Positions 9,873 to 30,682 are shown, counted from the whole stretch's first letter. The stretch: DNA of 63,877 bases, filler included, from Octopus bimaculoides (GCF_001194135.2; 4 parts of 4 records of this genome joined end to end with filler, not necessarily neighbours in it); one strand, 5' to 3'. Made by a program: numbers and translations. Notes: generated by a model from the sequence alone, not told the origin.

Positions 9873-10860
9873 AATGGGATTTCCCAATCCAAACAGATCA
9901 GGTGTTAGAGCATAACAGACCGGATGTAGTGGTGGTGGACAAGGCGCACCACATATGCTATATAGTTGATGCTGCATGCTCCTCTGACCCACGAATAGTC
10001 AGGAAGGAAAGCAAAAAGATAGATAAATACAGCATGGAAGGAGAAAAATGTCCGGTCAATTTTCAAGAGATGTGAACGCCAAGACAGATACAGAGGACCG
10101 GTGGCTATGAATGAGGAGTAGTGACTTATGCGCAGCTCAAGAACACGCGTTAAGTGCAGAATAGACAACACTACCGACAGCGACTAATGCAGAATGTATG
10201 CAAGAGGGGTGACACTGTATGGTACATCGTTAGCGAATGCCCGAAAGTGGCACAACGTGAATACAAAAGACACTATGGCAATGTGAGAAGAATGATCCAT
10301 TGGGAGCTCTGTGGAAAATCACGGATTACAAAGAGCAAAAACGTGGTATGAGAAAATCCCAGAAGGAATAATCGAAAATGAGAATTGCAAATACTGTGGG
10401 ATGCAATGATTCAGTGCCATCACATGACCAGATATAGGAGACCGGACATTGTTCTGGTGAATAAAAAAGAAAGAACATGCATGATAATCGACATAGCATG
10501 CCCCAATGACAACAGGATTAATGAAAAAGAAGAAAAAATAAGCAACTACGACAGTTTGAAGTGGGAAGGTTGTGGTCAATGAGGAGAGTAGACGTGATAC
10601 CAATAGTAATTGGCACACTTGGAAGTATCAGCACTCGACTACCAACATGGTTGGAAAAGATTGGTGCAAGTATGAAGGTAGAACACCTACAGAAACCAGC
10701 ATTGCTTGGAACTGCAAGAATTCTTCGCAGGATTATTGAAGTATGACCAGTAAACAAGTGTCACCTTAGTCTGCAGGCTGTGGACAGTTGACACTTGCCA
10801 CAATAGCCAGCTAAATAAGCTGTGAGTTTTCATCAAATAATGATGATGATGATGATGATA
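9873..10860 (+). mobile_element. R4/Dong-like non-LTR element, C-terminal CCHC and REL endonuclease fragments
   Basis: HNRPDVVVVD; CRM...IVSECPKVAQREYKRH; RRPDIVLVNKKERTCMIIDIACP; PIVIGTLG...ALLGTARILRR. Confidence 0.85.
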
Positions 10861-10869
10861 ATTCTAGAC

Positions 10870-11753
10870 GAACAGAAATAATGCAGGAAACAAAGTAGGG
10901 CAACAGAAGATCACTTATTAGTTGATAATTAAAAATTGTAGACGCAGATTGATGGGACTGAATGTAGCATGGCTAGATTACAAAAAAAAAACAAAAAAAA
11001 AAACATGACCACGCAGTTGGATACGTAATTGGTATAACAAAAACATAGAGAAAATGTTCAATGAAAGTAAGAAACATTGGAATACTGAAATGATCGGAGG
11101 AAAACAAAAACTCGAAAAAGTGAACATCAGACATGGAATATTCCAAGGTGATAGCTTATCTCCATTACTATTCGTATTGGCCATGACACCGTTCACTATG
11201 ATACTACGAAAAGTTTAAATTGCTTACAATTTGGAAAAAGGAAATGGTCAGAGAAATCATCTCCTTTTCATGGATGATATAAAGGTTTACGCGAAAAATG
11301 AGAAACAGCTTGAAAGTCTTGTACATACTATCTGCATTTTCACAGAAAACGAGAAAGCAACCATACTCTGGGATATGCCAATACACAGAGATAGAGAAAT
11401 TAAGTCCAATAGGCCAGATATAGTTGTCAAAGATCATGAAGGAAAAAAATGCTTTCTAATTGCTGTATCAATNNNNNNNNNNNNNNNNNNNNNNNNNNNN
11501 NNNNNNNNNNNATCATAGTAGGTGCCTTAGGTATAATAAAGAAATATTCAGACAAATACATAACAAAAACACCAGAACTTACAAATAAATATAACATACA
11601 GAAAATTGCACTACTGGGCACTGCACACATCCTACGCAAAACACTTTCAATACAGTAACCATAAGAGCATCACAGCAAACCACAGCACATACCCAAGGCA
11701 CACAGAGCTGCGCTCTGTAGTGAAGTAAAAGCACGTTATAAAAATAAAACTAT

Positions 11754-11818
<65 letters not shown>

Positions 11819-11835
11819 CATAATAATAATAATAA
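10870..11835 (+). mobile_element. R4/Dong-like element, internally deleted (RT joined to REL domain), with (AAT)n tail
   Basis: GIFQGDSLSPLLF, NHLLFMDDIKVYA, SNRPDIVVKD, IALLGTAHILRK; 3' UTR then (AAT)n. Confidence 0.85.
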
Positions 11836-13575
11836 GCACCAGGTATGGGTACAAAGTTTATAATACTATAATGAACCATCTATTTTACATGGACGATCTG
11901 AAGCTGTTCGCTAGAAATGACCAAGAGCTGGCAGGGCTGCTAACAACTGTTAAAGAGTTTAGGAATAACATCAGGATGGATTTGGCTTCGATAAGTGTGC
12001 TAAAGCAACTTTTGTAAGAGGCAAGCTCAGACAAACAGTTTCCATTGAATAAGATACCGACGCTACCATCAAGGAACTTGACTCACAAGAAAGTTACAAA
12101 TACCTGGGGATAAACGAAGATGGTATACAACGTGCTACTATGAAGGAAAAAATAAGAAAGGGGTACTACAGGAGAATAAGAACCATACTGAAAGCTGGAC
12201 TCAACTCGAAAAATCGCATCGAAGTAATTCACACTCTGGCACTTCCAGTAGTCCAATACAGTTTTAACATCATTAATTGGAATCCTACGGAGCTCCAACG
12301 CCTGTACAGGAAGACAAATAAACTACTAACATCTAACAACATGCACCACCCAAAAGTAGTCGTTGATCGTCTGTGTCTACCTAGAAGTAATGGGAGAAGA
12401 GGAATGATGCAGGTAGAACCGTGCTTTAAGACCTCCACAAGAGCAATGAACAGGTACTTATCTAGTACAGTCGACTGGATGCTGCGGCTTGTGTGCAAAT
12501 GCGAAAGCAGCATAAAGTCACATTCTATTGTCAACGAAGCTTGCAAATTCGCAAGGGAACTTGACATTAACCCTTAATTAGATGAAGAACCTGAAACTAC
12601 TGCCACCAATCAAGCAAAACGGATCAAGTAGACTGCAAAAAAAGAACGGCAGAAACAAATTGAGGAGTGGTGGAGTCAGAAGCCTCTTCATGGGCAGTAT
12701 ATACTTTGAAGCCGAAATGCTGATGTAGACTAAGCAACAACCCATCAGTGGCTGAGAAGCCCAGAACTGAAAGCAGATACTGGAGGCTTCATATTGGCGG
12801 CACAAGATCAAAGCTTGCTTACCAGAAACTATCGGGCTAACGTTCTTTAAAACGGTTCTGACTATAGACCGTCTAGTTTCGGGATGTCCTGTGCCGACAC
12901 CAAACGAATACAAAAATCGCCTCGATAGGGTAGGACAGCATTTACATTGGAAAATATATAAGCACTACAAAATCGGTACTTCTGCTTACTGGTATGAACA
13001 TCATCCTGAGCCAGTTGTTGAAGGTAAAAATCTTCTGGGATTTTCCAGTCAACACGGACAGAACGATCCAGGCGAATCGACCAGACATAGTTATTAAAGA
13101 CAGGGAAGAAAATACTAGTAGACTAATAGGTGTAAGTGTTCCCACTGATAAAAATATATCTGTAAAGGAATTTGACAAATTAAGTAAATATAAGGACCTG
13201 GGAATTGAAATACAAAAGATGTGGCATCCCAAAACAAGAACTGTTCCTGTTATTGTAGGTGCTCTAAGTATAATATAAAAAGGAATGTCAGAAGCAGCTA
13301 GATAACATCCCAGGTGAACCAAGTCTCAGAGAAATCCAAAAGATTGTGCTGACAAGGACTGCCCACATCCTTAGAAAAACCATACCAATTTGAGTGTCTG
13401 CTTTGTATTACATGAAGATATTTCGCTACTGCCGCTGCCACTTCCCCTCCCTAAGCTTTCAGTCATCTGTAACATTTCTATCCTTCACTCACTCTAGGGC
13501 GCTGGTTGTGTCTCGCCAAGTGATTGTAATAAACATACAGATTAAAAGTAAATAACAATAATAATAATAATAATA
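11836..13575 (+). mobile_element. 5'-truncated R4/Dong-like element
   Basis: NHLFYMDDLKLFA, KYLGI, NSKNRIEVIHTLALPVVQYSF, ANRPDIVIKD, EFDKLSKYKDL, VPVIVGAL; ends in (AAT)n. Confidence 0.88.
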
Positions 13576-14842: not shown

Positions 14843-15395
14843 GAAGTCTGGGGAGTTAGGTGGCCAGAGATTAGGGGTGTTGTGGTCGCAGAAATTGTCT
14901 GACAACCATGATTGGGTTCTCTTGTTTGTGTGTCATGGTGCAGAGTCCTGTTGCTAGACATAGGGTCTTCCAGAAGCCACCTCCTTGACCCAGAGCAGCA
15001 TCTCCTCCTCCAAGCACTCGATGTAGGCTTCCGTGTTGAGTCTGAGGTTGTGTGGGAAGATGAATGGAGATATAACGTCGCGATCACAAGTGATCACTCC
15101 AAACACCATGATGTTGAATAGATGTTTGATTTTTATCACTTTCGGTACATGTCCTCAGATTGACACCCAAACACTCTGAAATGTTCGTATTGGAGCTTCC
15201 GGCGCAAATACCAAGCAGTACAGAATGTAGTTTTCACATTTCTGACTAAGGGAATTACGTCATAGTTTCTGTTTTTCTCACAGACGATGTCCAACTGAAC
15301 CTACTGTACTGTGTAGTCGACAAAATCAAAACCAAACAATGCGCATGCACGAAATTAAAAATATAAAATGGCGAGAATTTATTCATCGCACCCTG
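14843..15395 (-). mobile_element. Tc1/mariner transposase fragment with one terminal repeat
   Basis: MVFGVITCD..SPFIF..LRLNTEAYIECLEE and LSDNFCDHNTPNLWPPNSPD; terminus TA-CAGGGTG on the minus strand near 15395. Confidence 0.75.
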
Positions 15396-15403
15396 TATAT
15401 ATA

Positions 15404-16323
15404 CAGAGCGTTTCAAAAAGAATGACCCAATTTAAACATATTTTTGAAACTACGGGCATCCAGCGATTGAAAGGTGTGTGGCTGAAATTGGCTTGGTCTA
15501 CAGTTTTAGTCGATCCGCGCCTTAATCTTCAATTAAAGCATTTTCCATTCTATAGTTAAGCAAGAGTCAATTAGTGATTTCAATTCCACGTGCGTTTCGT
15601 AACCGTTTTGGTGTTAATCCACCACTGGATGTTTGTGCAAGGGGAAAAATTCAGGTCGACCATGCTTTTCTGAGTAAAATGTGCGAAGAATTCAACAGGC
15701 GTTTGCGCGAAGCTCGAGTACGTCTACTTGCCATGCTAGCAGAGAACTTGCATTACCTCACACAACTGTGTGGTGTGTGTTAAGGCAACGTTTGACCATG
15801 AAGCCATATAAATTACAAATTGTACAAACTCTTCTTAGAGGACATAGAAGATGACAGTATTTTGCCGTGATTGATATTTAGTGATGAAGCTACTTTTCAT
15901 CTAAGCAGTAAAGTTAACTGCGCTAACGTGCGCATGTGGGGACTCCAGAATCCCCATGAAATCGTAGAGCATGAATGAAACCAAAAGTTAACATTTTTTG
16001 TGCGCCTTCACAAACCAAGATTTATGACCCGTACTTTTTTGAGGAGATACGTTAAGGAATATGTTTTTGTTCCTCCTTTAACTCGTGATCTTGATGAGCT
16101 TAAAAATAGAATAGCAGCAGCAACTGCTTCAATCGACGAAGACACTTTGCAAAGTGCTTCGTATGCATTTTGCTATCACCTTGATGTCATCCGTGTGTGG
16201 CTGGTGGAGGGCACATAGAAGTTTGTAATAATTTTGTATTTTGTACTCTGTTTCATTTGTGTAAAGCATTTTCTTCAATAAATATGGCAGTTTAAACTCG
16301 GTTATTATTTTTGAAACAGCCTG
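15404..16323 (+). mobile_element. Internally deleted Tc1/mariner element
   Basis: TA-flanked imperfect TIRs (CAGAGCGTTTCAAAAAGAATGACC / CAGGCTGTTTCAAAAATAATAACC); RAFRNRFGVNPP, FSDEATFHLS and YVKEYVFVPPLTRDLDELKNRI. Confidence 0.85.
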
Positions 16324-18714: not shown

Positions 18715-19069
18715 CATACACACATCTATATATATGAGTAAAAAACAGAATCATATATGTATATGTATATATGTATGTGTATATGTACATAGAGAGAGAG
18801 AGAGAGAGAAGAGAGAGAGATAGAGAGAGAGGGAGAGAGATAGAGAGATAGAGAGAGAGAGAGAGACAGACAGACAGTCTGAAGAACTGTCCATTAGGTT
18901 TTGGCTTGTAACTCTGTATAAAATTTGGTAACTCTATATATATGTTTATATATAAGAGTGTATAAATCTTTATACACTCTTATTATATAAAAATATGTTG
19001 TCTTGACTTTTATTACGCATGCGAAGCACGAGTAATAAATTATTCTAATTTTTTACCCCCACAATTTAC

Positions 19070-19115
<46 letters not shown>

Positions 19116-19807
19116 NNNNNNNNNNNNNNNNNNNNNNNNNNNNNNNNNNNNNNNNNNNNNNNNNNNNNNNNNNNNNNNNNNNNNNNNNNNNNNNNNNNNN
19201 NNNNNNNNNNNNNNNNNNNNNNNNNNNNNNNNNNNNNNNNNNNNNNNNNNNNNNNNNNNNNNNNNNNNNNNNNNNNNNNNNNNNNNNNNNNNNNNNNNNN
19301 NNNNNNNNNNNNNNNNNNNNNNNNNNNNNNNNNNNNNNNNNNNNNNNNNNNNNNNNNNNNNNNNNNNNNNNNNNNNNNNNNNNNNNNNNNNNNNNNNNNN
19401 NNNNNNNNNNNNNNNNNNNNNNNNNNNNNNNNNNNNNNNNNNNNNNNNNNNNNNNNNNNNNNNNNNNNNNNNNNNNNNNNNNNNNNNNNNNNNNNNNNNN
19501 NNNNNNNNNNNNNNNNNNNNNNNNNNNNNNNNNNNNNNNNNNNNNNNNNNNNNNNNNNNNNNNNNNNNNNNNNNNNNNNNNNNNNNNNNNNNNNNNNNNN
19601 NNNNNNNNNNNNNNNNNNNNNNNNNNNNNNNNNNNNNNNNNNNNNNNNNNNNNNNNNNNNNNNNNNNNNNNNNNNNNNNNNNNNNNNNNNNNNNNNNNNN
19701 NNNNNNNNNNNNNNNNNNNNNNNNNNNNNNNNNNNNNNNNNNNNNNNNNNNNNNNNNNNNNNNNNNNNNNNNNNNNNNNNNNNNNNNNNNNNNNNNNNNN
19801 NNNNNNN

Positions 19808-19852
<45 letters not shown>

Positions 19853-20199
19853 TGCGTCAGTTGTTTGAGGTCAAATTGTATGAACTTAGAAGAAAAACGC
19901 ATAGCTCTACAAAGAAATAAGCTGTATTTGAAAACAAATTGGTACAAATTGGTACAAAAGCCTTTAACTGCACCTATTCGAAGAATACACCATTAGCATC
20001 AATAGCTGTTTCAATACGATACGGTGTTGGAAGCACAGACATTCCTCAACCAGATGAATCATATCAATTTTAGACTCAATGCTGGTTACGGCGGACTTGA
20101 GAGATTTTATGGTATTAGGGGGCATTATTACTAGTCTAATGGATTGAGGTCTGGTGAGCTAGGAGATCAGGTGTCTGGGAGAACATGGTCATGGATATT

Positions 20200-20793: not shown

Positions 20794-20810
20794 GACTACA
20801 TAAAGAAATT

Positions 20811-21123
20811 GGTACTACTAAAGCAGAGTGGTCCCGAACGCGCAGTCGCGCGTCCGCACTAGCTAGTCGTGAGTGGTCGATCCTAACCCTAACCCTATCC
20901 CTAACCATAACCCTAACCCTAACCATAACCCTAACCCTATCCCTAACTCTAACCCTATCCCTAACCCTAACCCTAACCCTATCCCTAACCCTAACCCTAA
21001 CCCTAAATACATGTATTCATTTGCACGCGCGCACTTTTTGTAAGATCGACCACTCACGACTAGCTAGCGCGGACGCGCGACTGCGCGGGTGCACGTTCGG
21101 GATCACTCTGCTTTGGTAGTACC
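20811..21123 (+). mobile_element. Telomeric-repeat-carrying MITE, copy A (Merlin-like)
   Basis: TIR GGTACTACTAAAGCAGAGTGGTCCCGAACG... (~20811-20885 and ~21041-21123); 21 CCCTAA-type hexamers at 20881-21006; 6-bp flanking duplication GAAATT. Confidence 0.88.
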
Positions 21124-21446
21124 GAAATTAACATGACATTGTGTGCAGTGCAGTGTGGTTCGACTGCACTCGCTGCAATGAATTCGGGTCAGGATTACAA
21201 ACGATTGACTGACCGATCGAGATTAACGAACACCATCATCCAGCAAATGTTCGGCTATGTTTATAAGATCTGATAATGAGTATGGGCAAATACTTGTTAA
21301 TGAGTCGCTAGCATCGAGGATATCCGTAATAAAAGGAAGATACGGCTATGACAGCATCACATAGTCTTATTTGGTCATAGCGTAAATGTTGCCAAAAGAA
21401 CAAGCTAATACTCAGATCGTTGGGTGTTACAAGTGGTTAGAAAAGC

Positions 21447-22122
21447 GGTTCTACTTGAAAACAAAGGTCCCACTTAAATACAGAGGTCCCGACGCATCTA
21501 CGTAACGATATAAAGGGGGGGTTGGGAAATCTAGTTTTACCAAAACTACTGTGACTTCACATAAGCCCTAGATATATTTCATGTTAGAACTATTGCAAAC
21601 AATCCGGAGAAGTTGGTAGATTTTTTTCAAAAGTCATGGTATGTTACGTACAAAGCATTTCAAATGTACGCTGTGGGGACGTGTCATGACACTTATTGCT
21701 GATACAAGAAATGATCACGATATCATACAATGGGTGAAGGGTGCACACCACCTAACCCTAAAACTAACACTAACCCTAAAAACTAACCTTAAAACTAACC
21801 CTAAAACTAACCCTAAAAACTAACCCTAAAACTAACCCTAACCTTAGCCCTAAAAACTAACCTTAAAACTAAACCTAAAAACTGGCACTAAAACTAACCC
21901 TAAAAATTAACCTAAAACTAACCCTAACCCTAACCCTAACGAGTGTGCACTGTAAAAACATCAGATTAAATACAGACAATATTGTAGGGAAAAAGATCGG
22001 AGTAAAAACAGACGATATTGTGGGGGCCCTAACATCAGTAAAAGTAGCTTTGATCAAACTAGATTACCTCCCCTTCATATCGTTACGTAGATGTATTGGG
22101 ACCTCTGTATTTAAGTAGTGTC
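21447..22122 (+). mobile_element. Older Merlin-like deletion derivative with transposase remnant and degenerate telomere-like array
   Basis: ~80-bp imperfect TIRs; termini similar to the MITE TIR; coding remnant from 21581 (MLELLQ..NNPEKLVDFF/KSHGMLRTKHFKCTLWGRVMTL..QW); CCCTAA(A)n array at ~21750-21938. Confidence 0.65.
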
Positions 22123-22934
22123 TATAAACCTTCTTCACCACGGCTAATGATTCCAAGTCTATACATCACATCCAGTGGTCTTACAGCGGGCTAATTCACA
22201 ATCTTGAGTTTTTCTGTTTCACAGCCACTATTTGCCAGACAGATATTAAACCGATGCTGATTTAATCTATACTTATGATGGATATTCCTTTTGTCTTGCT
22301 GGGTTCCTGGCAATCTTCCTCACAAGGCCTTTTATCATATGTATTTTCAATGTGACTTTTCATATAAACGGCTTCTCATACAATAAGTTTGTAAATATAT
22401 TTTATATAATGTTTTTTTTTATTTTCTCCCATCCTAACGCAACTAGCATCTCTCCCTTAATTAGTTATTTATTTAGAAAATTTATTCATATAAACACCGT
22501 TTAACCCTAACCCTCATATGTATATATGTTTGTATGTATGTCATTATTCAGTTTATTTCAAGATTTGTTGTTTATAGAGAAAGAACCGGTTTCTAACCTA
22601 GATCTAAGGTTCCTTCATTGCAATTTCAACATCAACAACAGGGTATGTATGTATGTATTTATGTATGTATGGTTTATGTATGTATTCTCATGCAGAGTTA
22701 CATATCTAGACATGCTCATATATATTTAAATGATAAACTTTTGGAAAGTTTTACAAATCCAGTGATGGATTGGATCTGTAGCCTTCGAATTAGTTTTCTC
22801 TTTTCTGGTTTTGAGAAGCTAATTTCCAAACTGTGCACAGTTTTTCTTCTCTATCCCAGATCATTATATCAGGTCTGTTGTGTTTACATTTTATTGAGGT
22901 TTTCACGGGTACATTCCACCAATATTCCTTTTCA

Positions 22935-23252
22935 GGTATTACTAAAGCAGAGTGGTCCCGAACGCGCACCCGCGCAGTCGCGCGTCCGCGATAGCTAGTC
23001 GTGAGGGTCGATCCTACAAAAAGTGCGCGCGCGCGTGAATGCGCGTGTGCAAATGAATACATGTGTTTAGGGTTAGGGTTAGGGTTAGGGATAGGGTTAG
23101 GGTTAGGGTTAGGGATAGGGTTAGGGATAGGGTTAGGGTTAGGGTTAGGGTTAGGGATAGGGTTAGGGTTAGGATCGACCACTCACGACTAGCTAGCGCG
23201 GACGCGCGACTGCGCGACTGCGCGTTCGGGACCACTCTGCTTTAGTAGTACC
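22935..23252 (-). mobile_element. Telomeric-repeat-carrying MITE, copy B (reverse orientation)
   Basis: Same TIRs; 18 TTAGGG/ATAGGG units at 23067-23173; exact 8-bp target duplication CCTTTTCA (22927-22934, 23253-23260). Confidence 0.92.
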
Positions 23253-23267
23253 CCTTTTCATTATGAG

Positions 23268-23418
23268 TTCTTTACGTTCTGAATTCAAATACCACCGAGG
23301 TCGACTTTGCCTTTCAACCATTCAGGGTCGATAAATTAAGTACCAGTACAGGGGTCGGTCTAATTGACTGGCCCCCTCCCCAAAAATTTCGGGCCTTGTG
23401 CCTAGAGTAGAAAAGACT
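23268..23418 (+). mobile_element. 5'-truncated SINE with a 15-bp target duplication
   Basis: CCTTTTCATTATGAG at 23253-23267 and 23419-23433. Confidence 0.8.
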
Positions 23419-25895
23419 CCTTTTCATTATGAGAGGCTATGGCTTCTACCATATTGTAGATTTTTATTTCTTTGTCCTGGGGATTATCCTTCCAACAGAT
23501 TTCGTTATAATGTCCTAGCTACAACGTCATGTCTCATCGGTAGATAATACCATGATGACGTTTTCGGACAACTGCTTATGATGTGGGTGATATCTTCAGT
23601 GCGAACTCCATCAGTTGTCACCTTTTACGGCTTTTCCTGCATCTCTATCCCTTTTGTGCATCAGGTACTTGGTTGATATTTCCTGTTCCTGGATTGCAAA
23701 TGCATACCATTCAAAGTGGGAGATAATAATCTGGCTATTCGTCCATGATAAACTGCTTTGATGATCGATGTTACTATCATTTTATGGAGCTTTCTACCAA
23801 CATATCCATGCATAATCTTCTGTTCATATAGGCTCATCCTTTCATCTGATGATATGTTGTGGTAGAGTCGTGCGACTTCTTTGGGCACGTATTCTTGTCA
23901 TCAGACAAGGAGCTGCCTTCCAAGTCTTATGATGTTATCAGCTTCATGTATGCAAACTTGATCAAGGGATGCACTTCGTCGCTTGATGGTTGAAAGATGT
24001 TGCTGAAGATCCCTTCAGCAACCTGCGATATTCAAAGGCATTTTGGATGGATGTTAAGCCTCTGCCGCTTTGTTACGTTTTAAGTAGAAGTGGTCTACAT
24101 CATTGTTTATGTGGAAATTAATATAGTGATGAATTGATCTAATAGGCGAGGGAACTCCTTTATTCCCTCCGAACGCGAGACAATATGAAAAAAAGAAAAT
24201 CATATTTGAACATATGAACAATTCCTTTTGAAGGTACTCGGATATTAACAGAAATCCAAATAACAAAGGAAATTATTTGAGTTAACATTTTATAATTACA
24301 CTTCATTCATATTTTCTGATTTTTCTGTTAATGAATTGATAATGGATTAAATGATAACAACAACAGGTATACTTAAAATTTATCTTCGATTTAATAAGAT
24401 GGATGTTTAGTTGAGTATGTACATATTTATAAATAACTTTTAAAGACTTTTGAAGAATTTTAAAGAGTTAATGATATTAGTTACAGTATATTCGGAAACA
24501 ATAAATCTAAATATCCACGAATAGAATTATGAATTATAATACGAGTTCAGTTAAGCATAGAATATTGAAAACCATACATTTTATAATTTGAATATAACAT
24601 TTAGACAATGTGGTTGATCAGTAAATAATGTAAACCTATTTAACATCAATACATAATATTTAGTGTCCGGAATTTTGTTATTCCAAAATTATCAATAGAT
24701 ATTTACTTACAAATTGTGGAGTTTGGTCTTACAGGTTTGCGGTAAAAGTCAACAAACATCTCTACTATAATGTCACTTCTTAGAAGAACAAAAAATGTAA
24801 AACAAATAATCTTTCTTCTTGGCTTTTTTGTTTTCTTCGTTTAGATTAGACACACCTCAGCATATCAATTAACAGTGTTTTTTTAAGGTTATTTTCTGAT
24901 TCAAGTGCCGTTTTTTTCTGGAGTTTTCGAAGAAACTTCGCCATATATGTTAACTTTCCATTTTTATTTTTTAAAAAGTATTACGTTTGTATATTCGATC
25001 AAACGCTTTGAACGCCTTAACGGTTCAACCACGTCAAACCAATGTTCAAAGTAAGACGCCATAATCACACTGGAATTGCAGTCAAAGAACAATCTATAAA
25101 CGACTGATTCTTCAGTTGCATCGCAACAGTTGTTTTATTAAGGGAGAATTTATTTAAGATTTAAGTACAAAACTATGAACGATTATACTTTTAGATTTAA
25201 ATTTGATTTGCTGCACAAAATTTATTTACTTTTATTGATATATTTATATGTGAAATAATGTTTATCTTTCGAATACTTAACTTTATTGTCAAAATATTCT
25301 AACTGGTGATAGCTCTAGTTATTATAAAGAACATAAGACGAATATAAAAGATGTATACATCATTTACGCTGTACAGAAAATGGAGGGAACGACTTGGCGA
25401 CTCATTCCAGGTGTTTTAAATATTCCGTTTCATTTAACATTGTTAATACTTTCATTTCTTTCTGTGTGAGCTGATAAGTCGAAACCCTATTAATAATACT
25501 TCGTAGATTAAGCAAGAAATAGAAACATTTGATATCACACACTAGATAACATAAACAAAAGTATATATAAAAAAACAGTCAACTAATATTTATGGTTTAA
25601 TATAATTTGTTTTAAGCAGTTTAATAATTTATTCAAATTTTGATTCAAGGCCAGCAATTATAGGGAAATGGGTTAAGGGCGATCTTTCGATGCCAGTCCG
25701 AAATATCGGCCTTAAGGCGATCTTTCGATACCAGTCCGAAATATTGCCGGGTTAAGTTGATTACATCAACCATGGCGCTTAGCAGATAGTAATTTTACCA
25801 ACCCCAAAAGGATGAAAGACAAAACTGCCCTCTACGGGATTTAAGCTCAAGGCATTTTTATAAGGAAAGAATAGCATAATGACAAAGTATACCTA

Positions 25896-26292
25896 GGTAC
25901 TACTAAAGCAGAGTGGTCCCGAACGCGCAGTCGCGCAGTTGCGCGTCCGCGCTAGCTAGTCGTGAGTGGTCGATCCTAACCCTAACCCTATCCCTAACCC
26001 TAACCCTAACCCTAACCGTATCCCTAACCCTATCCCTAACCCTAACCCTAACCCTATCCCTAACCCTAACCCTAACCCTAAACACATGTATTCATTTGCA
26101 CACGCGCACTCACACACGCGCGCACGCGCACTTTTTGTAGGATCGACCACTCACGACTAGCTAGCGCGGGTGCGCGACTGCGCGGGTGCGCGACTGCGCG
26201 GGTGCGCGACTGCGCGGGTGCGCGACTGCGCGACTGCGCGGGTGCGCGACTGCGCGGGTGCGCGTTCGGGACCACTCTGCTTTAGTAATACC
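25896..26292 (+). mobile_element. Telomeric-repeat-carrying MITE, copy C
   Basis: Same TIRs; 18 hexamers at ~25974-26081; expanded GCGCG(ACT/GGT) octamer array in the right arm; exact 9-bp target duplication GTATACCTA (25887-25895, 26293-26301). Confidence 0.92.
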
Positions 26293-26331
26293 GTATACCT
26301 ATATGTGAAACTATATAAACATAAGCTAGAC

Positions 26332-27259: not shown

Positions 27260-27548
27260 CATGAATGACCTGAGATTGCACCTTGATAGTTCCCCTCCCA
27301 GGCACAAGTCCGGGCAAGATTATTTATGGAAGACCAGCAGTCGCTCATGCATACCTCCCCCTTCTATGCCACCGATGTTATCCAAGGGGAAGGCAAAGAC
27401 CGATACAGCTTGGCACCAGTCAAGGTGCAACTCATTTCTACAGAGAAATGAACTGGAGCAACGTATCTTCTTCAAGAACACAACACACAGCCCAGTCCGG
27501 GAATCGAACTCAGTACCTTATGACTGTGAGCCCAACGCTCTGACCATC
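27260..27548 (-). mobile_element. tRNA-derived SINE-like repeat
   Basis: Minus-strand head GGTCAGAGCGTTGGGCTCACAGTCATAAGGTACTGAGTTCGATTCCCGG (A/B-box-like) followed by a non-tRNA body. Confidence 0.55.
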
Positions 27549-27549
27549 C

Positions 27550-28540
27550 GTCGTCGCTCTCCTCGAACAAGGTTGGTGGTGGTTCTTTTGGGGTGTCTCT
27601 TTTGAGGTCCTCCGCATCCCTCTGTGGTACCTTTGATGTGGGCTGCTTTATCGTGGTGTTGGTGGACTTCTTTTTTTCTTTCGGATTGTCAGTCTGTGGT
27701 GGGTTGATGGGTTGTTTCATCGCGGTGCTGGTTGGCTCCTCCTTGCTTTCTTTCGGGTCGTCAGACTGTGGTGGGTTGATAGGTGGAGGGGTGCTTGTGG
27801 TTGTAAGACCTGTGGGCATGTGGTTTTTAATTGGCCCTTATGCCCACATTTAAAGCACCTCGGACTTCTTCCCTCCACCATAACTCTCAGAGTTGTCTCG
27901 TTCGGCAGTATTATTTGCTCTGGTATCTCTTCCAAGTCCCTCTGGGTGACCTGGATTATTAGCTCCAGACCTTGGCCCCAGCAGTTCTGCTGGTGTAGCC
28001 TGGTGGCCCTCAGGTTCAGCAGTACAGCTGCCACCAGTCACACCGCATCGATCTCTGATGGGACCGCCCCTATCCTTATTTTCGATGTTCGCCTTTTGTG
28101 GTAAGTCGGTAGTAACACCAGATCTGCCGACTTTAAGAGAGACGTAGAGTGTTCCTTTGCCTCCTCTTCTCAAGCGAATCTCACCTCGACTGAGCCGAAA
28201 CGCCTTACTCTATGTATTTTATGTTGCGTCAAATTGGTAGTAGGCACTTTTCAATGGCATCTTTATCCTTTTTGTTGCCAGGGACAGCGTTCTGTAAACT
28301 ATTGTTTTGCGTTTTGTGTTGTACATCACTTCTTCTGAGGGAGTCAGCTTCATGTTCGCTCCTTCCCTCCGCGATAAATTTGCACTGTTTCGCTAGTGAT
28401 GCCGGCAATGGGCGCGTAGTTCATTTTCCCATTACCATTCTGTGTTTCTATTCGGAAGTCGGTTTTATCATTCTCTGGTGTTTTTCTCTTCCTTCGTTTG
28501 GCAAAATGGGAAGGAGAGAAACATTTGCTTGAACAATTCC
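27550..28540 (-). mobile_element. Tx1/L1-like LINE ORF1 fragment
   Basis: TLRVMVEGRSPRCFKCGHKGQLKTTCP (VEG plus CCHC knuckle), followed by a proline/lysine-rich tail; frameshifted. Confidence 0.75.
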
Positions 28541-29049
28541 TCTAATTAGTAGTCTAAAATTAGATATTGGGAGACGTCAATTTCCATGTACTGATTGCGT
28601 AAAAAAATTTCCTCAAAGGAAAACAATTCGCCCCTAAACAGGGGGAATTCTCACAAAATCGAACCTGCCAAAGCAGGCAATGTGTTCAAAAGACACAGAA
28701 AACAGACAAAATTGGATAACTGTTCAAAAAACAACGGCAATCCCAAGAGGGAAAACCACAATTAAACGAGAGCAGCAGAAAACAGGTCTGCTCAGTAAAA
28801 AGCATTAAAAGACAATGACACTCAACTACTCAGTGTAAGTTGGACCTTTTTATATGTATACATATTCATTTACTTGTTTCACTCATTTGACTGTGGCCAT
28901 GCTGGAGCACCGCCTTTTAGTCGAAGAAATCAAACCCAGAACTTATGTACATATTTTGTATTTGATGTATTTAATATGCTTTATATATTGATGTGTCTAA
29001 TTTGCTTATCCCCACAATTGCTTATATATATATATATATATATATATTC

Positions 29050-30682
29050 TAAACCAAAACTATCCGACGAACAGGAACGCGAAACTCTGAGTAACAGTTT
29101 TTGTGATGTCTTTGTACAGTTGCAAAATCAACAACAAAAGCAGCAACAGGAGTCGCAGAAGCAACTATTACAGCAACAACTACAACAACAACAATTATTG
29201 GACCTATATTCAAAGAAGTCCGAAAATGAGGTAAATTTGTTTTCGCCAGACGGCGTTTCGAACTCGATTAATGAATTCAGTTATAACCCAGAAGAGGATA
29301 TAACTTTTGCATTGCATTACAGAAGGTACGAGGAAATTTTTAAGCAAGATTGAAAATCATGGTCGGACGAACAAAAAGTGAAATTGTTATTGCGAAAATT
29401 AGCTCCGTTAGAACATGAACGTTACTGTAATTTCATATTGCCCAAAAAACCCAATTAAATTTATTTCAAAGACACAATAGAATTACTGTCTAACATATTC
29501 GGTGATAAAACTTCTCTATTTAATACTCGAATGGAGTGTTGGAATATAACGAAAAAAGAGGATGATGCAGGAACAGTTAACAGGATGTGTGAAAATTTTA
29601 AACTTACACCTGAGGTGTTCAAGTGTCTTATTTTTGTACAAGGCCTTACAGCAAGCGAAGATACAGAAATTCAGGCAAGAATTCTCTGTAAATTGGAACA
29701 AGTGAACCAAGATTTAACCTTATAGTCTATGGCAGAAGAATGCCAAAGGATGGTAAACCTGAAACATGATGTAGAAGAAATTCAAGGAAAGGGTTCCTCA
29801 AAAATACAAATATGCCGACCGGAAGAGTTCAACCAAAAAAGAGCGGCACATCCTAATCCATGTTATGGATGTGGGGGTATAAATTTCAGAAAAGACTGTC
29901 CATGTAAAAACCAAAATCGTTACAGTTGCAAAAGAATTGGTCACAAGAGTTCACATTGCAGAACAAAATTACAAAGGTCAAACGTTAAAAATCCTAGAGT
30001 GTTCTCAGCAGAAACAAAAATCGACTCCCAAATAAGAAAATTCGTACGCGTAAAAATAAATGGAATACATATTAAACTTCAGTTGGATACTGGAAGTGAT
30101 ATTTTAATAATAAATATGGACACACGGAAGAAAATAGGGAAACTTATGTTGAGAAAAATAGCGAAACCTGCTCGTAGCGTGACGGGGCGACAAATTACAT
30201 CTTATTGGCGAAATGTGGACTAATGTCACATTTCGAGGGAAAACATGCAAGGCGAAAGCCTTCGTCGTTAAAAATGCAACCGATCTGTTTGGTACCGATT
30301 GGTTAGAATTATTCGATTTATGGGAAGGTCCCATAAATCTCTATTGTATAAACGTAAATGGTTGTCTCTCTAAAAATAATTCGTCTGAAGAGTTAGAGAA
30401 ATTTTTTTTTAATGTTTCCGCAAGTACTCTTGGACAAACTAGGTCTATGCACAAAGAGTGAAGCATGTTTTGAATTAGATGATAACGTTACACCTGTGTC
30501 AAGCCTATAGGAAAGTGCCTTTTGCGGTAATAAAACAAGTAGACGAGGAATTGGACAGATTAGAAAAAAACGGAATCATTGAAAAAGTGCATTACGCGAA
30601 AAGAGAGAGAGGTGCAGGAAAGAAAAAAGAAAAGAAAAGAAATTCCACTTTCGCATAGTAGTCGAAATCTCAAAAGGGGAGA
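29050..30682 (+). mobile_element. Ty3/Gypsy LTR retrotransposon internal region (gag, protease, start of RT; RT-RH-IN deleted)
   Basis: FSYNPEEDITF..YRRYEEIF (gag); CYGCGG..HKSSHC knuckles; LQLDTGSD protease; VPFAVIKQVDEELDRLEKNGIIEKV (pre-RT); purine tract at 30672-30682. Confidence 0.85.

What the first reader, a model, noticed from the sequence alone, without database searches (positions are those of the whole stretch)
20811..26292. A Merlin-like MITE family that carries telomeric (TTAGGG)n as its internal cargo
Seen: three copies (20811-21123, 22935-23252 reversed, 25896-26292) share 75-85 bp TIRs starting GGTA(C/T)TACTAAAGCAGAGTGGTCCCGAACG. Each has an internal block of 18-21 telomeric hexamers and a short unique spacer (ACATGTATTCATTTGCAC...CTTTTTGTA). 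Each is flanked by its own direct repeat (6, 8, 9 bp), so each is a separate insertion. Established: GGNRM termini with 8-9 bp target duplications are diagnostic of the Merlin (IS1016-related) superfamily, and TTAGGG is the ancestral metazoan telomere repeat. Inference: a cut-and-paste element is seeding interstitial telomeric sequence. The cargo could recruit TRF/shelterin-type proteins, fold into G-quadruplexes, or act as a telomere-healing or fragile site. I do not recognise this as a described family, but cannot exclude an existing repeat-library entry.
Basis: partly seen in the sequence, partly recalled or inferred. Interest (0 to 1): 0.88.

Follow-up and report, generated by a model that had tools for sequence, protein, structure and literature searches.

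The report
Small transposons carrying telomere repeats
Three copies of a roughly 320-base non-coding jumping element each carry the same inherited block of 18-21 telomere-type (TTAGGG) repeats, so transposition has scattered telomere-like DNA through this stretch of an unidentified animal genome; which transposase moves them is not known.

Summary
Three elements (20811-21123 +, 22935-23252 -, 25896-26292 +) share terminal inverted repeats (TIRs) of 75-83 bp that start GGTA(C/T)TAC. Each has its own flanking direct repeat (6, 8 and 9 bp), an internal (CCCTAA)n block of 21, 18 and 18 units, and a 34-56 bp spacer. The copies are 96-98% identical. The four variant CCTATC units occur in the same order in all three arrays, so the telomeric block was acquired once and has since moved with the element. 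These are young non-autonomous TIR transposons (MITEs) that carry a telomeric microsatellite as passenger.

Assignment to Merlin fits the 5'-GG termini, the TIR length and the 8/9-bp duplications. It is not proven: no transposase gene is in the piece, no further copies could be retrieved, and MuDR/Foldback-type elements fit the same features. All proposed functions of the cargo (shelterin binding, fragile or healing sites) are untested. Only the G-quadruplex sequence motif and a hairpin are shown.

A second TIR-bounded segment (about 21447-22123) lies between copies 1 and 2. It has similar termini and a degenerate telomere-like array, and may be an older relative. The host organism was not identified. 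MITEs carrying hitchhiking tandem repeats are known; I found none described with telomeric repeats.

The parts
20811..21123 (+). MITE copy 1 (313 bp), the most diverged copy. Left TIR 20811-20881, (CCCTAA)-type array of 21 units 20882-21006, spacer 21007-21040, right TIR 21041-21123. Flanking 6-bp repeat GAAATT at 20805-20810 and 21124-21129.
22935..23252 (-). MITE copy 2 (318 bp), reversed. In window coordinates: right TIR 22935-23016, spacer 23017-23066, (TTAGGG)-type array of 18 units 23067-23173, left TIR 23174-23252. 8-bp target-site duplication CCTTTTCA at 22927-22934 and 23253-23260. Inserted next to a LINE C-terminal coding fragment (22835-22921, minus strand).
25896..26292 (+). MITE copy 3 (397 bp). 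Left TIR 25896-25974, array of 18 units 25975-26081, spacer 26082-26137, right TIR 26138-26292, lengthened by 72 nt relative to the other two copies (alignment). TRF marks the whole repetitive tract, native units included, at 26164-26264 (8/16/24-bp GCGCGACT/GCGCGGGT units). 9-bp target-site duplication GTATACCTA at 25887-25895 and 26293-26301.
21447..22123 (.). Possible older relative (E2): a TIR-bounded segment of about 650-680 bp. Arms 21472-21522 / 22066-22116 are 90% complementary and extend with gaps to about 95-110 nt. A 19-bp tandem duplication sits at the left end. The internal telomere-like array at 21751-21939 has a 12/13-bp unit CTAAAACTAACC and ends in three perfect CCCTAA. The terminal ~30 nt resemble the MITE termini. 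No clear target-site duplication; ends are approximate.

Best explanation
These are three recent insertions of one family of non-autonomous cut-and-paste (class II, TIR) transposons, that is, MITEs.

Shown: each copy is a unit of about 320 bp with inverted ends of about 80 bp. Each is bracketed by its own short duplication of the target site. None has a reading frame that matched any protein in the one search run (a composite of TIR and spacer translations); all its reading frames are translations of low-complexity repeats.

Inferred: a transposase encoded elsewhere recognises the TIRs, which contain 2-3 tandem 8-bp GCGCAGTC-type subrepeats. It excises the unit and reinserts it with an 8- or 9-bp staggered cut.

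The superfamily is most likely Merlin (about 0.45), because of the 5'-GG ends, the long TIRs and the mixture of 8- and 9-bp duplications. MuDR/Foldback-type is the main alternative (about 0.3).

The telomeric block is passenger DNA acquired once by the family's ancestor. The four variant CCTATC units occur in the same order in all copies, and the array always lies between the left TIR and the spacer in the same orientation.

Inferred origin: a break inside an ancestral element was repaired with telomeric repeats. The G-strand array starts after ...CATGTGT and runs in register into TAGGATCGACC. This is the inner end of the TIR, and the opposite arm has it too, giving a 4-nt TAGG microhomology. 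Short interstitial telomeric sequences arise this way during double-strand-break repair in mammals.

Consequence (shown for three events): transposition, and not chromosome fusion or local repair, places ~110-bp telomeric tracts at new interstitial sites.

The confidence of 0.8 is for the MITE-with-inherited-telomeric-cargo reading; the Merlin label alone is about 0.45.
For: - TIR 23-mer occurs 6 times against 0 expected.
- Alignment of the three copies is collinear over TIR, array, spacer and TIR.
- Pairwise identity is 96.3-98.4%. Array unit strings have CCTATC at units 3, 8, 10, 14 in copies 2 and 3, and at 3, 10, 13, 17 in copy 1 (same order, with +2 and +1 units of slippage). A left/right TIR difference (AGTC versus ACCC) is conserved in all copies.
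- Exact abutting duplications of 8 and 9 bp.
- Flanks are unrelated.
- The single strand folds into an 83-bp-stem hairpin with the array in the loop: -105.9 kcal/mol, z = -18.8.
- Every run of two or more perfect telomeric hexamers in the 23-kb piece lies inside these elements or E2.
- Copies are GC- and CpG-rich islands (GC 53-60%, CpG o/e 1.2-1.4) in a background of 37% GC and CpG o/e 0.72, which fits young age.
- Merlin criteria (TIR 24-462 bp, terminal GG, 8- or 9-bp duplications) come from PMC8101967.
- Origin of interstitial telomeric sequences at break repair, with in-register microhomology, comes from PMC7215372.
Against: - No autonomous partner or transposase fragment of any 8-9-bp-duplication superfamily was seen. 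Stop-free segments of 55 aa or more were read by eye, and ten of them were scanned against Pfam.
- No further copy could be retrieved from any collection. Family size, the fraction of copies with the array, and mobility beyond these three events are therefore unknown.
- Copy 1 has only a 6-bp flanking repeat.
- No empty site, orthologous or paralogous, could be shown.
- The host is unidentified, so calling the array 'telomeric' assumes a TTAGGG-type telomere.
- The piece comes from a gapped draft assembly, so array lengths may not be exact.
Confidence: 0.8

Rival explanations
1. The same kind of element (a MITE with telomeric cargo), but mobilised by a MuDR/Foldback-type or other non-Merlin transposase.
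For: - TIRs are long (about 80 bp) and built partly of tandem 8-bp subrepeats whose number varies: 1-2 units in left arms and a 72-nt expansion in copy 3. From my own knowledge, this is a Foldback/MULE-like trait.
- MuDR-type elements make 4-10 bp duplications (PMC10045372), which covers 6, 8 and 9 bp, including the 6-bp case that Merlin does not explain.
Against: - The 8/9-bp mixture and the GG terminus are exactly the published Merlin signature.
- From my own knowledge, MULE duplications are usually 9-11 bp.
- No MULE-type coding sequence is nearby either.
Confidence: 0.3
2. The telomeric cargo is kept because it does something. It might tether the element or its transposition complex to telomere-repeat-binding proteins. 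Alternatively, the host might use the dispersed tracts as protein-binding, G-quadruplex or chromosome-healing sites.
For: - The arrays are still nearly perfect, with runs of up to 4 canonical units and an intact GGG every 6 nt, giving G4 motifs of 51-99 nt.
- A second, more decayed TIR segment with similar termini also holds a telomere-like array.
- Four such arrays lie within 5.5 kb and none in the other 17 kb of the piece. Targeting could produce this pattern.
Against: - The copies are only 2-4% diverged, so array integrity needs no selection.
- Clustering is equally explained by local hopping of cut-and-paste elements, and by the fact that this window was picked because it was striking.
- There are no binding, expression or population data.
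Confidence: 0.1
3. The arrays were added independently at each locus, for example by telomerase repair of breaks at the hairpin loop of a pre-existing array-less MITE.
For: Long-stem hairpins are break-prone, and short interstitial telomeric sequences do arise at break repair.
Against: - All three arrays have the same orientation, the same junctions on both sides and the same order of four variant CCTATC units. Copies 2 and 3 are identical in 17 of 18 units.
- Independent additions would not reproduce this.
Confidence: 0.03
4. Not transposition: a local segmental or inverted duplication, or a mis-assembly of one repeat in a gapped short-read scaffold.
For: The piece has four N gaps and many microsatellites, and three copies lie close together.
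Against: - Similarity stops exactly at the GG...CC termini, and the flanks are unrelated.
- Each copy has a different exact abutting duplication.
- The copies differ from one another by substitutions and indels.
- No gap touches a copy.
Confidence: 0.03

Closest known systems
Merlin superfamily DNA transposons and their MITEs (Feschotte 2004; survey in PMC8101967)
   Same: Terminal 5'-GG...CC-3', TIR length within the 24-462 bp range, and 8- and 9-bp target-site duplications within one family.
   Different: No IS1595-type DDE transposase has been linked to these elements. One copy has a 6-bp repeat. An internal telomeric array is not a described Merlin feature in the papers I could read.
MITEs that carry hitchhiking micro- or minisatellites: lepidopteran (GTCY)n MITEs of Coates et al. 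2011, Xenopus Xstir/MITE tandem repeats of Hikosaka and Kawahara 2004, and bivalve MITE-like elements with satellite cores (all listed in PMC6947457)
   Same: A short TIR element whose interior is a tandem repeat that is copied to new sites by transposition. The repeat number changes by slippage between copies.
   Different: Here the repeat is the canonical telomere hexamer with fixed variant units, not an arbitrary microsatellite or a 150-bp satellite monomer.
Short interstitial telomeric sequences inserted at double-strand-break repair in mammals (Nergadze et al.; PMC7215372)
   Same: An exact (TTAGGG)n tract of comparable length (tens to about 100 bp) at a non-terminal site, with a junction that is in register with a few bases of microhomology. 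This is a plausible one-off origin of the cargo.
   Different: Those are single, locus-specific repair scars without TIRs. Here the tract is embedded in a mobile unit and is multiplied with 8/9-bp duplications.
Foldback / MULE-NOF type elements (from my own knowledge, not tested here)
   Same: Long inverted ends built partly of short tandem subrepeats of variable number, and duplications of about 9 bp.
   Different: Much shorter overall, different termini, and no evidence for the transposase.
Telomere-repeat-bearing mobile elements of other classes: endonuclease-lacking Penelope-like elements that end in telomeric repeats (as summarised in PMC4522978), and ciliate telomere-bearing Tc1/mariner elements (own knowledge)
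   Same: A mobile element physically joined to the host telomere repeat.
   Different: In those, the repeats sit at the element's ends and serve priming or end formation at telomeres. Here the repeats are internal, in the loop between the TIRs, and the insertions are interstitial with ordinary duplications.

Membership tests
MITE (non-autonomous TIR DNA transposon) | Terminal inverted repeats | tested here: met
   71/75 and 78/82 matching positions in copies 1 and 2. The TIR core is found 6 times against 0 expected.
MITE (non-autonomous TIR DNA transposon) | Target-site duplication, different for each copy | tested here: met
   Exact abutting repeats of 6, 8 and 9 bp, with unrelated flanks.
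MITE (non-autonomous TIR DNA transposon) | Small size and no coding capacity | tested here: met
   313-397 bp. Only low-complexity reading frames. A composite of the TIR/spacer translations found no protein at E <= 1 among 5.8 billion.
MITE (non-autonomous TIR DNA transposon) | Many dispersed copies in the genome | not testable with these tools
   Three copies in 5.5 kb of the window. The source genome is not in any searchable collection.
Merlin superfamily | Autonomous partner encoding a DDE_Tnp_IS1595 transposase with the same termini | not testable with these tools
   No DDE transposase of an 8-9-bp-duplication superfamily was seen in the piece (stop-free segments read by eye, ten scanned against Pfam). 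No access to the source genome.
Merlin superfamily | 8- or 9-bp target-site duplication | tested here: inconclusive
   8 bp (copy 2) and 9 bp (copy 3) meet the criterion. Copy 1 has 6 bp, which may be a partly deleted duplication. Criterion from PMC8101967.
Merlin superfamily | TIRs of 24-462 bp with conserved terminal 5'-GG-3' | tested here: met
   All six ends begin GGTA(C/T)TAC, and the TIRs are 75-83 bp.
MuDR / Foldback-type | Duplication length within the family range (4-10 bp per PMC10045372; usually 9-11 bp from my own knowledge) and long TIRs | tested here: inconclusive
   6, 8 and 9 bp and 80-bp TIRs with 8-bp subrepeats are compatible but not specific.
hAT superfamily | 8-bp duplication and short TIRs beginning YARNG (own knowledge) | tested here: not met
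   Copy 3 has an unambiguous 9-bp duplication. The termini are GGTAC, not YARNG.
Tandem-repeat-carrying (microsatellite-hitchhiking) MITEs | An internal tandem array inherited with the element and varying by slippage | tested here: met
   The same order of variant units in all copies, with unit numbers of 21, 18 and 18.

The most novel reading that the evidence does not exclude
A lineage of related TIR transposons keeps a telomere-repeat array as a working part and not as junk. The lineage would comprise the young 320-bp family and the older E2-like element with similar termini. The array would bind the host's telomere-repeat proteins. This would either steer or protect the transposon, or give the host a mobile supply of interstitial telomere seeds that influence fragility, healing of broken chromosomes or karyotype change.
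Probability: 0.1. Interest if true: 0.8.

Novelty: new variant of a known kind. Interest (0 to 1): 0.5.

Why it matters
Interstitial telomeric sequences are usually explained as relics of chromosome fusions or as scars of break repair. Here the sequence shows a third route directly: a cut-and-paste element copying a ~110-bp telomeric tract to at least three new sites.

If the family is abundant in its genome, it would account for many interstitial telomere signals in that species. It would also confound telomere-motif scans of assemblies. Finally, it would offer natural, dispersed, near-identical telomeric tracts for testing protein binding, G-quadruplex formation and fragility.

None of this changes the basic picture of MITE biology. 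The element type is ordinary and only the cargo is unusual.

Tried and rejected
1. Retrieving more copies through reading frames. A composite of the six-frame TIR and spacer peptides, searched against 5.8 billion proteins, gave no hit. Exact-product look-ups of three window ORFs gave nothing.
2. Exact TIR 20- and 22-mers were absent from metagenome, prokaryote-genome and viral contig collections.
3. Sampling related genomes through neighbouring retroelement proteins. The LINE ORF hit 44 ENA proteins at 40-78% identity over the aligned part, and the gag-protease ORF hit two Logan and one ENA protein. The 16 loci fetched (124 kb) share only the retroelements at 64-80% nucleotide identity. They contain no TIR match (up to 5 errors allowed) and no telomeric array. 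The organism stayed unidentified. My impression that some short repeats look cephalopod-like is memory only and was not used.
4. Searching for a paralogous empty site. The flanks of all copies have no second copy in the piece. The LINE fragment next to copy 2 aligns to other LINE copies only over 26-28 residues, all on one side of the insertion.
5. Rfam and tRNA scans of the piece found nothing.
6. Ten literature searches found no paper describing a TIR/duplication-bounded element with an internal telomeric array. One search, for the Logan run accession prefix, was wasted on an unrelated match.
7. hAT was rejected because of the 9-bp duplication and the termini.
8. Independent telomerase addition, and duplication or mis-assembly, were rejected for the reasons given under the rival explanations.
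Full report
OBSERVATION

The region was read directly and analysed with TRF, the repeat finder, a pattern search, MAFFT and my own scripts.

- Within each copy the two arms align over 75-83 nt, with 71/75 matches in copy 1 and 78/82 in copy 2. In copy 3 the right arm is 72 nt longer than in the other copies (alignment), through expansion of the GCGCGACT/GCGCGGGT units; TRF marks the whole repetitive tract at 26164-26264.
- Each copy is immediately flanked by its own exact direct repeat: GAAATT, CCTTTTCA and GTATACCTA.
- The flanks beyond these repeats share no similarity.
- No assembly gap touches a copy.

ANATOMY

Oriented alike, every copy reads in this order:
- left TIR of 71-79 nt
- (CCCTAA)-type array
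- spacer ACATGTATTCATTTGCAC...(CG/CA-rich, variable)...CTTTTTG
- right TIR of 82-83 nt, or 155 nt in copy 3

The arrays have 21, 18 and 18 units. They are not pure. Copies 2 and 3 both have the variant CCTATC at units 3, 8, 10 and 14, and they differ in one unit only. Copy 1 has the same four variants in the same order at units 3, 10, 13 and 17, plus three private variants, so it gained two units and then one unit by slippage.

A difference between the left and right arms (GCGCAGTC versus GCGCACCC) is also conserved in all copies. Pairwise identity is 96.3-98.4%, with copy 1 the oldest.

The family therefore descends from one master that already had the array, a fixed polarity and this spacer. 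The telomeric block was not added at each locus.

The single strand folds into an 83-bp stem with the array in the loop (-105.9 kcal/mol, z = -18.8). The G-rich strand has G-quadruplex motifs of 51-99 nt.

The copies are GC- and CpG-rich (GC 53-60%, CpG o/e 1.2-1.4). The background is 37% GC with CpG o/e 0.72. This agrees with recent insertion.

WHAT IT IS

Four features together define a MITE, a non-autonomous class II transposon moved in trans by a transposase:
- short length
- long TIRs
- copy-specific duplications of 8 and 9 bp
- no coding capacity: only low-complexity frames, and no protein match for the TIR/spacer translations

The TIRs contain two or three tandem 8-bp GCGCAGTC-type units, which may be binding sites. 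That is an inference.

Every run of two or more perfect telomeric hexamers in the 23-kb piece lies inside these three copies or inside the neighbouring element E2. In this stretch, then, interstitial telomeric DNA is entirely transposon-borne.

SUPERFAMILY

Published Merlin criteria are TIRs of 24-462 bp with terminal 5'-GG, 8- or 9-bp duplications, and a DDE_Tnp_IS1595 transposase (PMC8101967). Another source gives 8 bp (PMC10045372).

The first criterion is met. The second is met by two of the three copies. The third could not be tested, because no transposase of a suitable kind was seen in the piece. What I did was read by eye the stop-free segments of 55 aa or more and scan ten of them against Pfam. 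Pfam matched only a reverse-transcriptase fragment and a retroelement aspartyl protease. By eye I also recognised LINE C-terminal fragments and a mariner-like remnant.

MuDR-type elements make 4-10 bp duplications. From my own knowledge, their Foldback relatives have long TIRs made of subrepeats, so they remain a real alternative. hAT is excluded by the unambiguous 9-bp duplication and the GGTAC termini. I put Merlin at about 0.45, MuDR/Foldback at about 0.3, and the remainder on other or unknown superfamilies.

ORIGIN OF THE CARGO (inference)

On the G-rich strand the array begins right after ...CATGTGT. It ends ...TTAGG|ATCGACC, running in register into TAGGATCGACC. This is the inner end of the TIR, and the opposite arm has it as well (CTTTTTG-TAGGATCGACC).

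A 4-nt in-register microhomology at one junction is what is seen at short interstitial telomeric sequences inserted during double-strand-break repair in mammals, where telomerase is implicated (PMC7215372).

The simplest history is a single repair event inside an ancestral element, perhaps at the break-prone hairpin loop. That variant was then amplified by transposition.

A POSSIBLE RELATIVE

Between copies 1 and 2 lies a segment of about 650-680 bp (about 21447-22123).

- Its inverted arms are 51 nt at 90% complementarity and extend to about 95-110 nt with gaps.
- It has a 19-bp tandem duplication at its left end.
- It has an internal array of a 12/13-bp unit CTAAAACTAACC, a degenerate double telomere unit, ending in three perfect CCCTAA.
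- Its terminal ~30 nt align with the MITE termini: GGTACTAC-TAAA-GCAGAGTGGTCCCGAACGC against GGTCCCACTTAAATACAGA--GGTCCCG-ACGC. For the four arm pairs, 1, 6, 19 and 43 of 2000 shuffles reach the observed score. This test was made post hoc.
- It has no clear duplication, is AT-rich and CpG-poor, and is single-copy in the piece.

It may be an older member of the same transposon lineage that also carried telomere-type cargo. This is suggestive and not established.

ATTEMPTS TO GO BEYOND THE WINDOW

All attempts failed. Details are in the Tried and rejected section. In summary:
- The source genome is not in the searchable collections.
- The nearest DNA I could fetch (124 kb from ENA and Logan assemblies, including Tara metagenome scaffolds) shares only retroelements at 64-80% identity. 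It has neither the TIR nor any telomeric array.
- The organism is unidentified.

Three things therefore remain open: the genome-wide copy number, the fraction of copies with the array, and whether a Repbase or Dfam entry exists.

COMPARISON WITH WHAT IS KNOWN

MITEs that carry hitchhiking tandem repeats are well documented. Examples are the lepidopteran (GTCY)n MITEs, the Xenopus MITE-borne repeats and the bivalve MITE-like elements, all listed in PMC6947457.

Mobile elements joined to telomeric repeats are known in other classes, but there the repeats sit at the ends. One example is the Penelope-like elements that lack the endonuclease domain.

I found no paper describing a TIR- and duplication-bounded element with an internal canonical telomeric array. 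No paper in the library combines interstitial telomeres, target-site duplication, terminal inverted repeat and transposition. That library is incomplete, and repeat databases could not be queried.

VERDICT

This is a real and cleanly defined feature. It is an ordinary kind of element (a MITE with a hitchhiking tandem repeat) carrying an unusual cargo, so it counts as a new variant of a known kind.

Three transposition events that seeded interstitial telomeric tracts are shown. The Merlin label is plausible but unproven. The functional ideas are untested.

Interest is moderate (0.5). It would rise if the family proves abundant, or if the cargo proves to be maintained across related families.

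Noticed in passing
window 21447-22123 (array 21751-21939): A second TIR-bounded segment (E2) lies between MITE copies 1 and 2. It has a degenerate telomere-like 12/13-bp array ending in three perfect CCCTAA. Its termini resemble those of the MITE family. It has a 19-bp tandem duplication at the left end and no clear target-site duplication.
   Followed up: partly
window 23268-23418 (duplications 23253-23267 and 23419-23433): A 151-bp retroposon-like insert has an exact 15-bp target-site duplication CCTTTTCATTATGAG. This duplication begins exactly at the right-hand 8-bp duplication of MITE copy 2, so the two insertions share a target boundary. The order of the two events cannot be told. The insert is single-copy in the piece and absent from the fetched loci.
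   Followed up: partly
window 26164-26264: The right TIR of copy 3 carries a minisatellite of 8/16/24-bp GCGCGACT/GCGCGGGT units (TRF span 101 nt). It makes that arm 72 nt longer than in the other copies. The same 8-bp unit varies by one copy in the left TIR of copy 1.
   Followed up: yes
window 22835-22921 (minus strand): MITE copy 2 lies 13 bp from a LINE C-terminal coding fragment (...WWNVPVKTSIKCKHNRPDIMIWDREE...). The fragment is related to the LINE copies at 10382-10579 and 12934-13275. The upstream LINE sequence beyond the insertion was not recognisable.
   Followed up: partly
window 10154-13368, 14957-16215, 27475-28037, 28799-30655: The rest of the piece is mostly decayed mobile elements. 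There are at least two LINE copies, with an RVT_1 fragment at 11009-11215. There are mariner-like remnants on both strands. There is a CCHC zinc-knuckle ORF1-like frame containing a 46-nt direct repeat (27667-27712 / 27739-27784). There is also an LTR-retroelement gag/aspartyl-protease frame.
   Followed up: partly
window 19061-19864: The repeat finder's 402-nt 'perfect palindrome' is an artefact. It consists of two (AT)n tracts on either side of a 692-base run of N (19116-19807).
   Followed up: yes
window 25678-25706 and 25716-25744: A 29-nt direct repeat GGCGATCTTTCGAT(G/A)CCAGTCCGAAATAT (97% identical, 38 nt apart) lies about 150 bp upstream of MITE copy 3. It may be part of another short repeat family.
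   Followed up: no
loci L001, L002, L006-L016: Relatives of the window's LINE occur in long host-like contigs of two ENA assemblies (ERZ25067561, ERZ25878469). They also occur in many Tara metagenome scaffolds (protein 47% identical to the query ORF). Nucleotide identity to the window LINE over all these loci is 64-75%. The LINE lineage is therefore widespread in marine samples. This did not identify the window's organism.
   Followed up: partly
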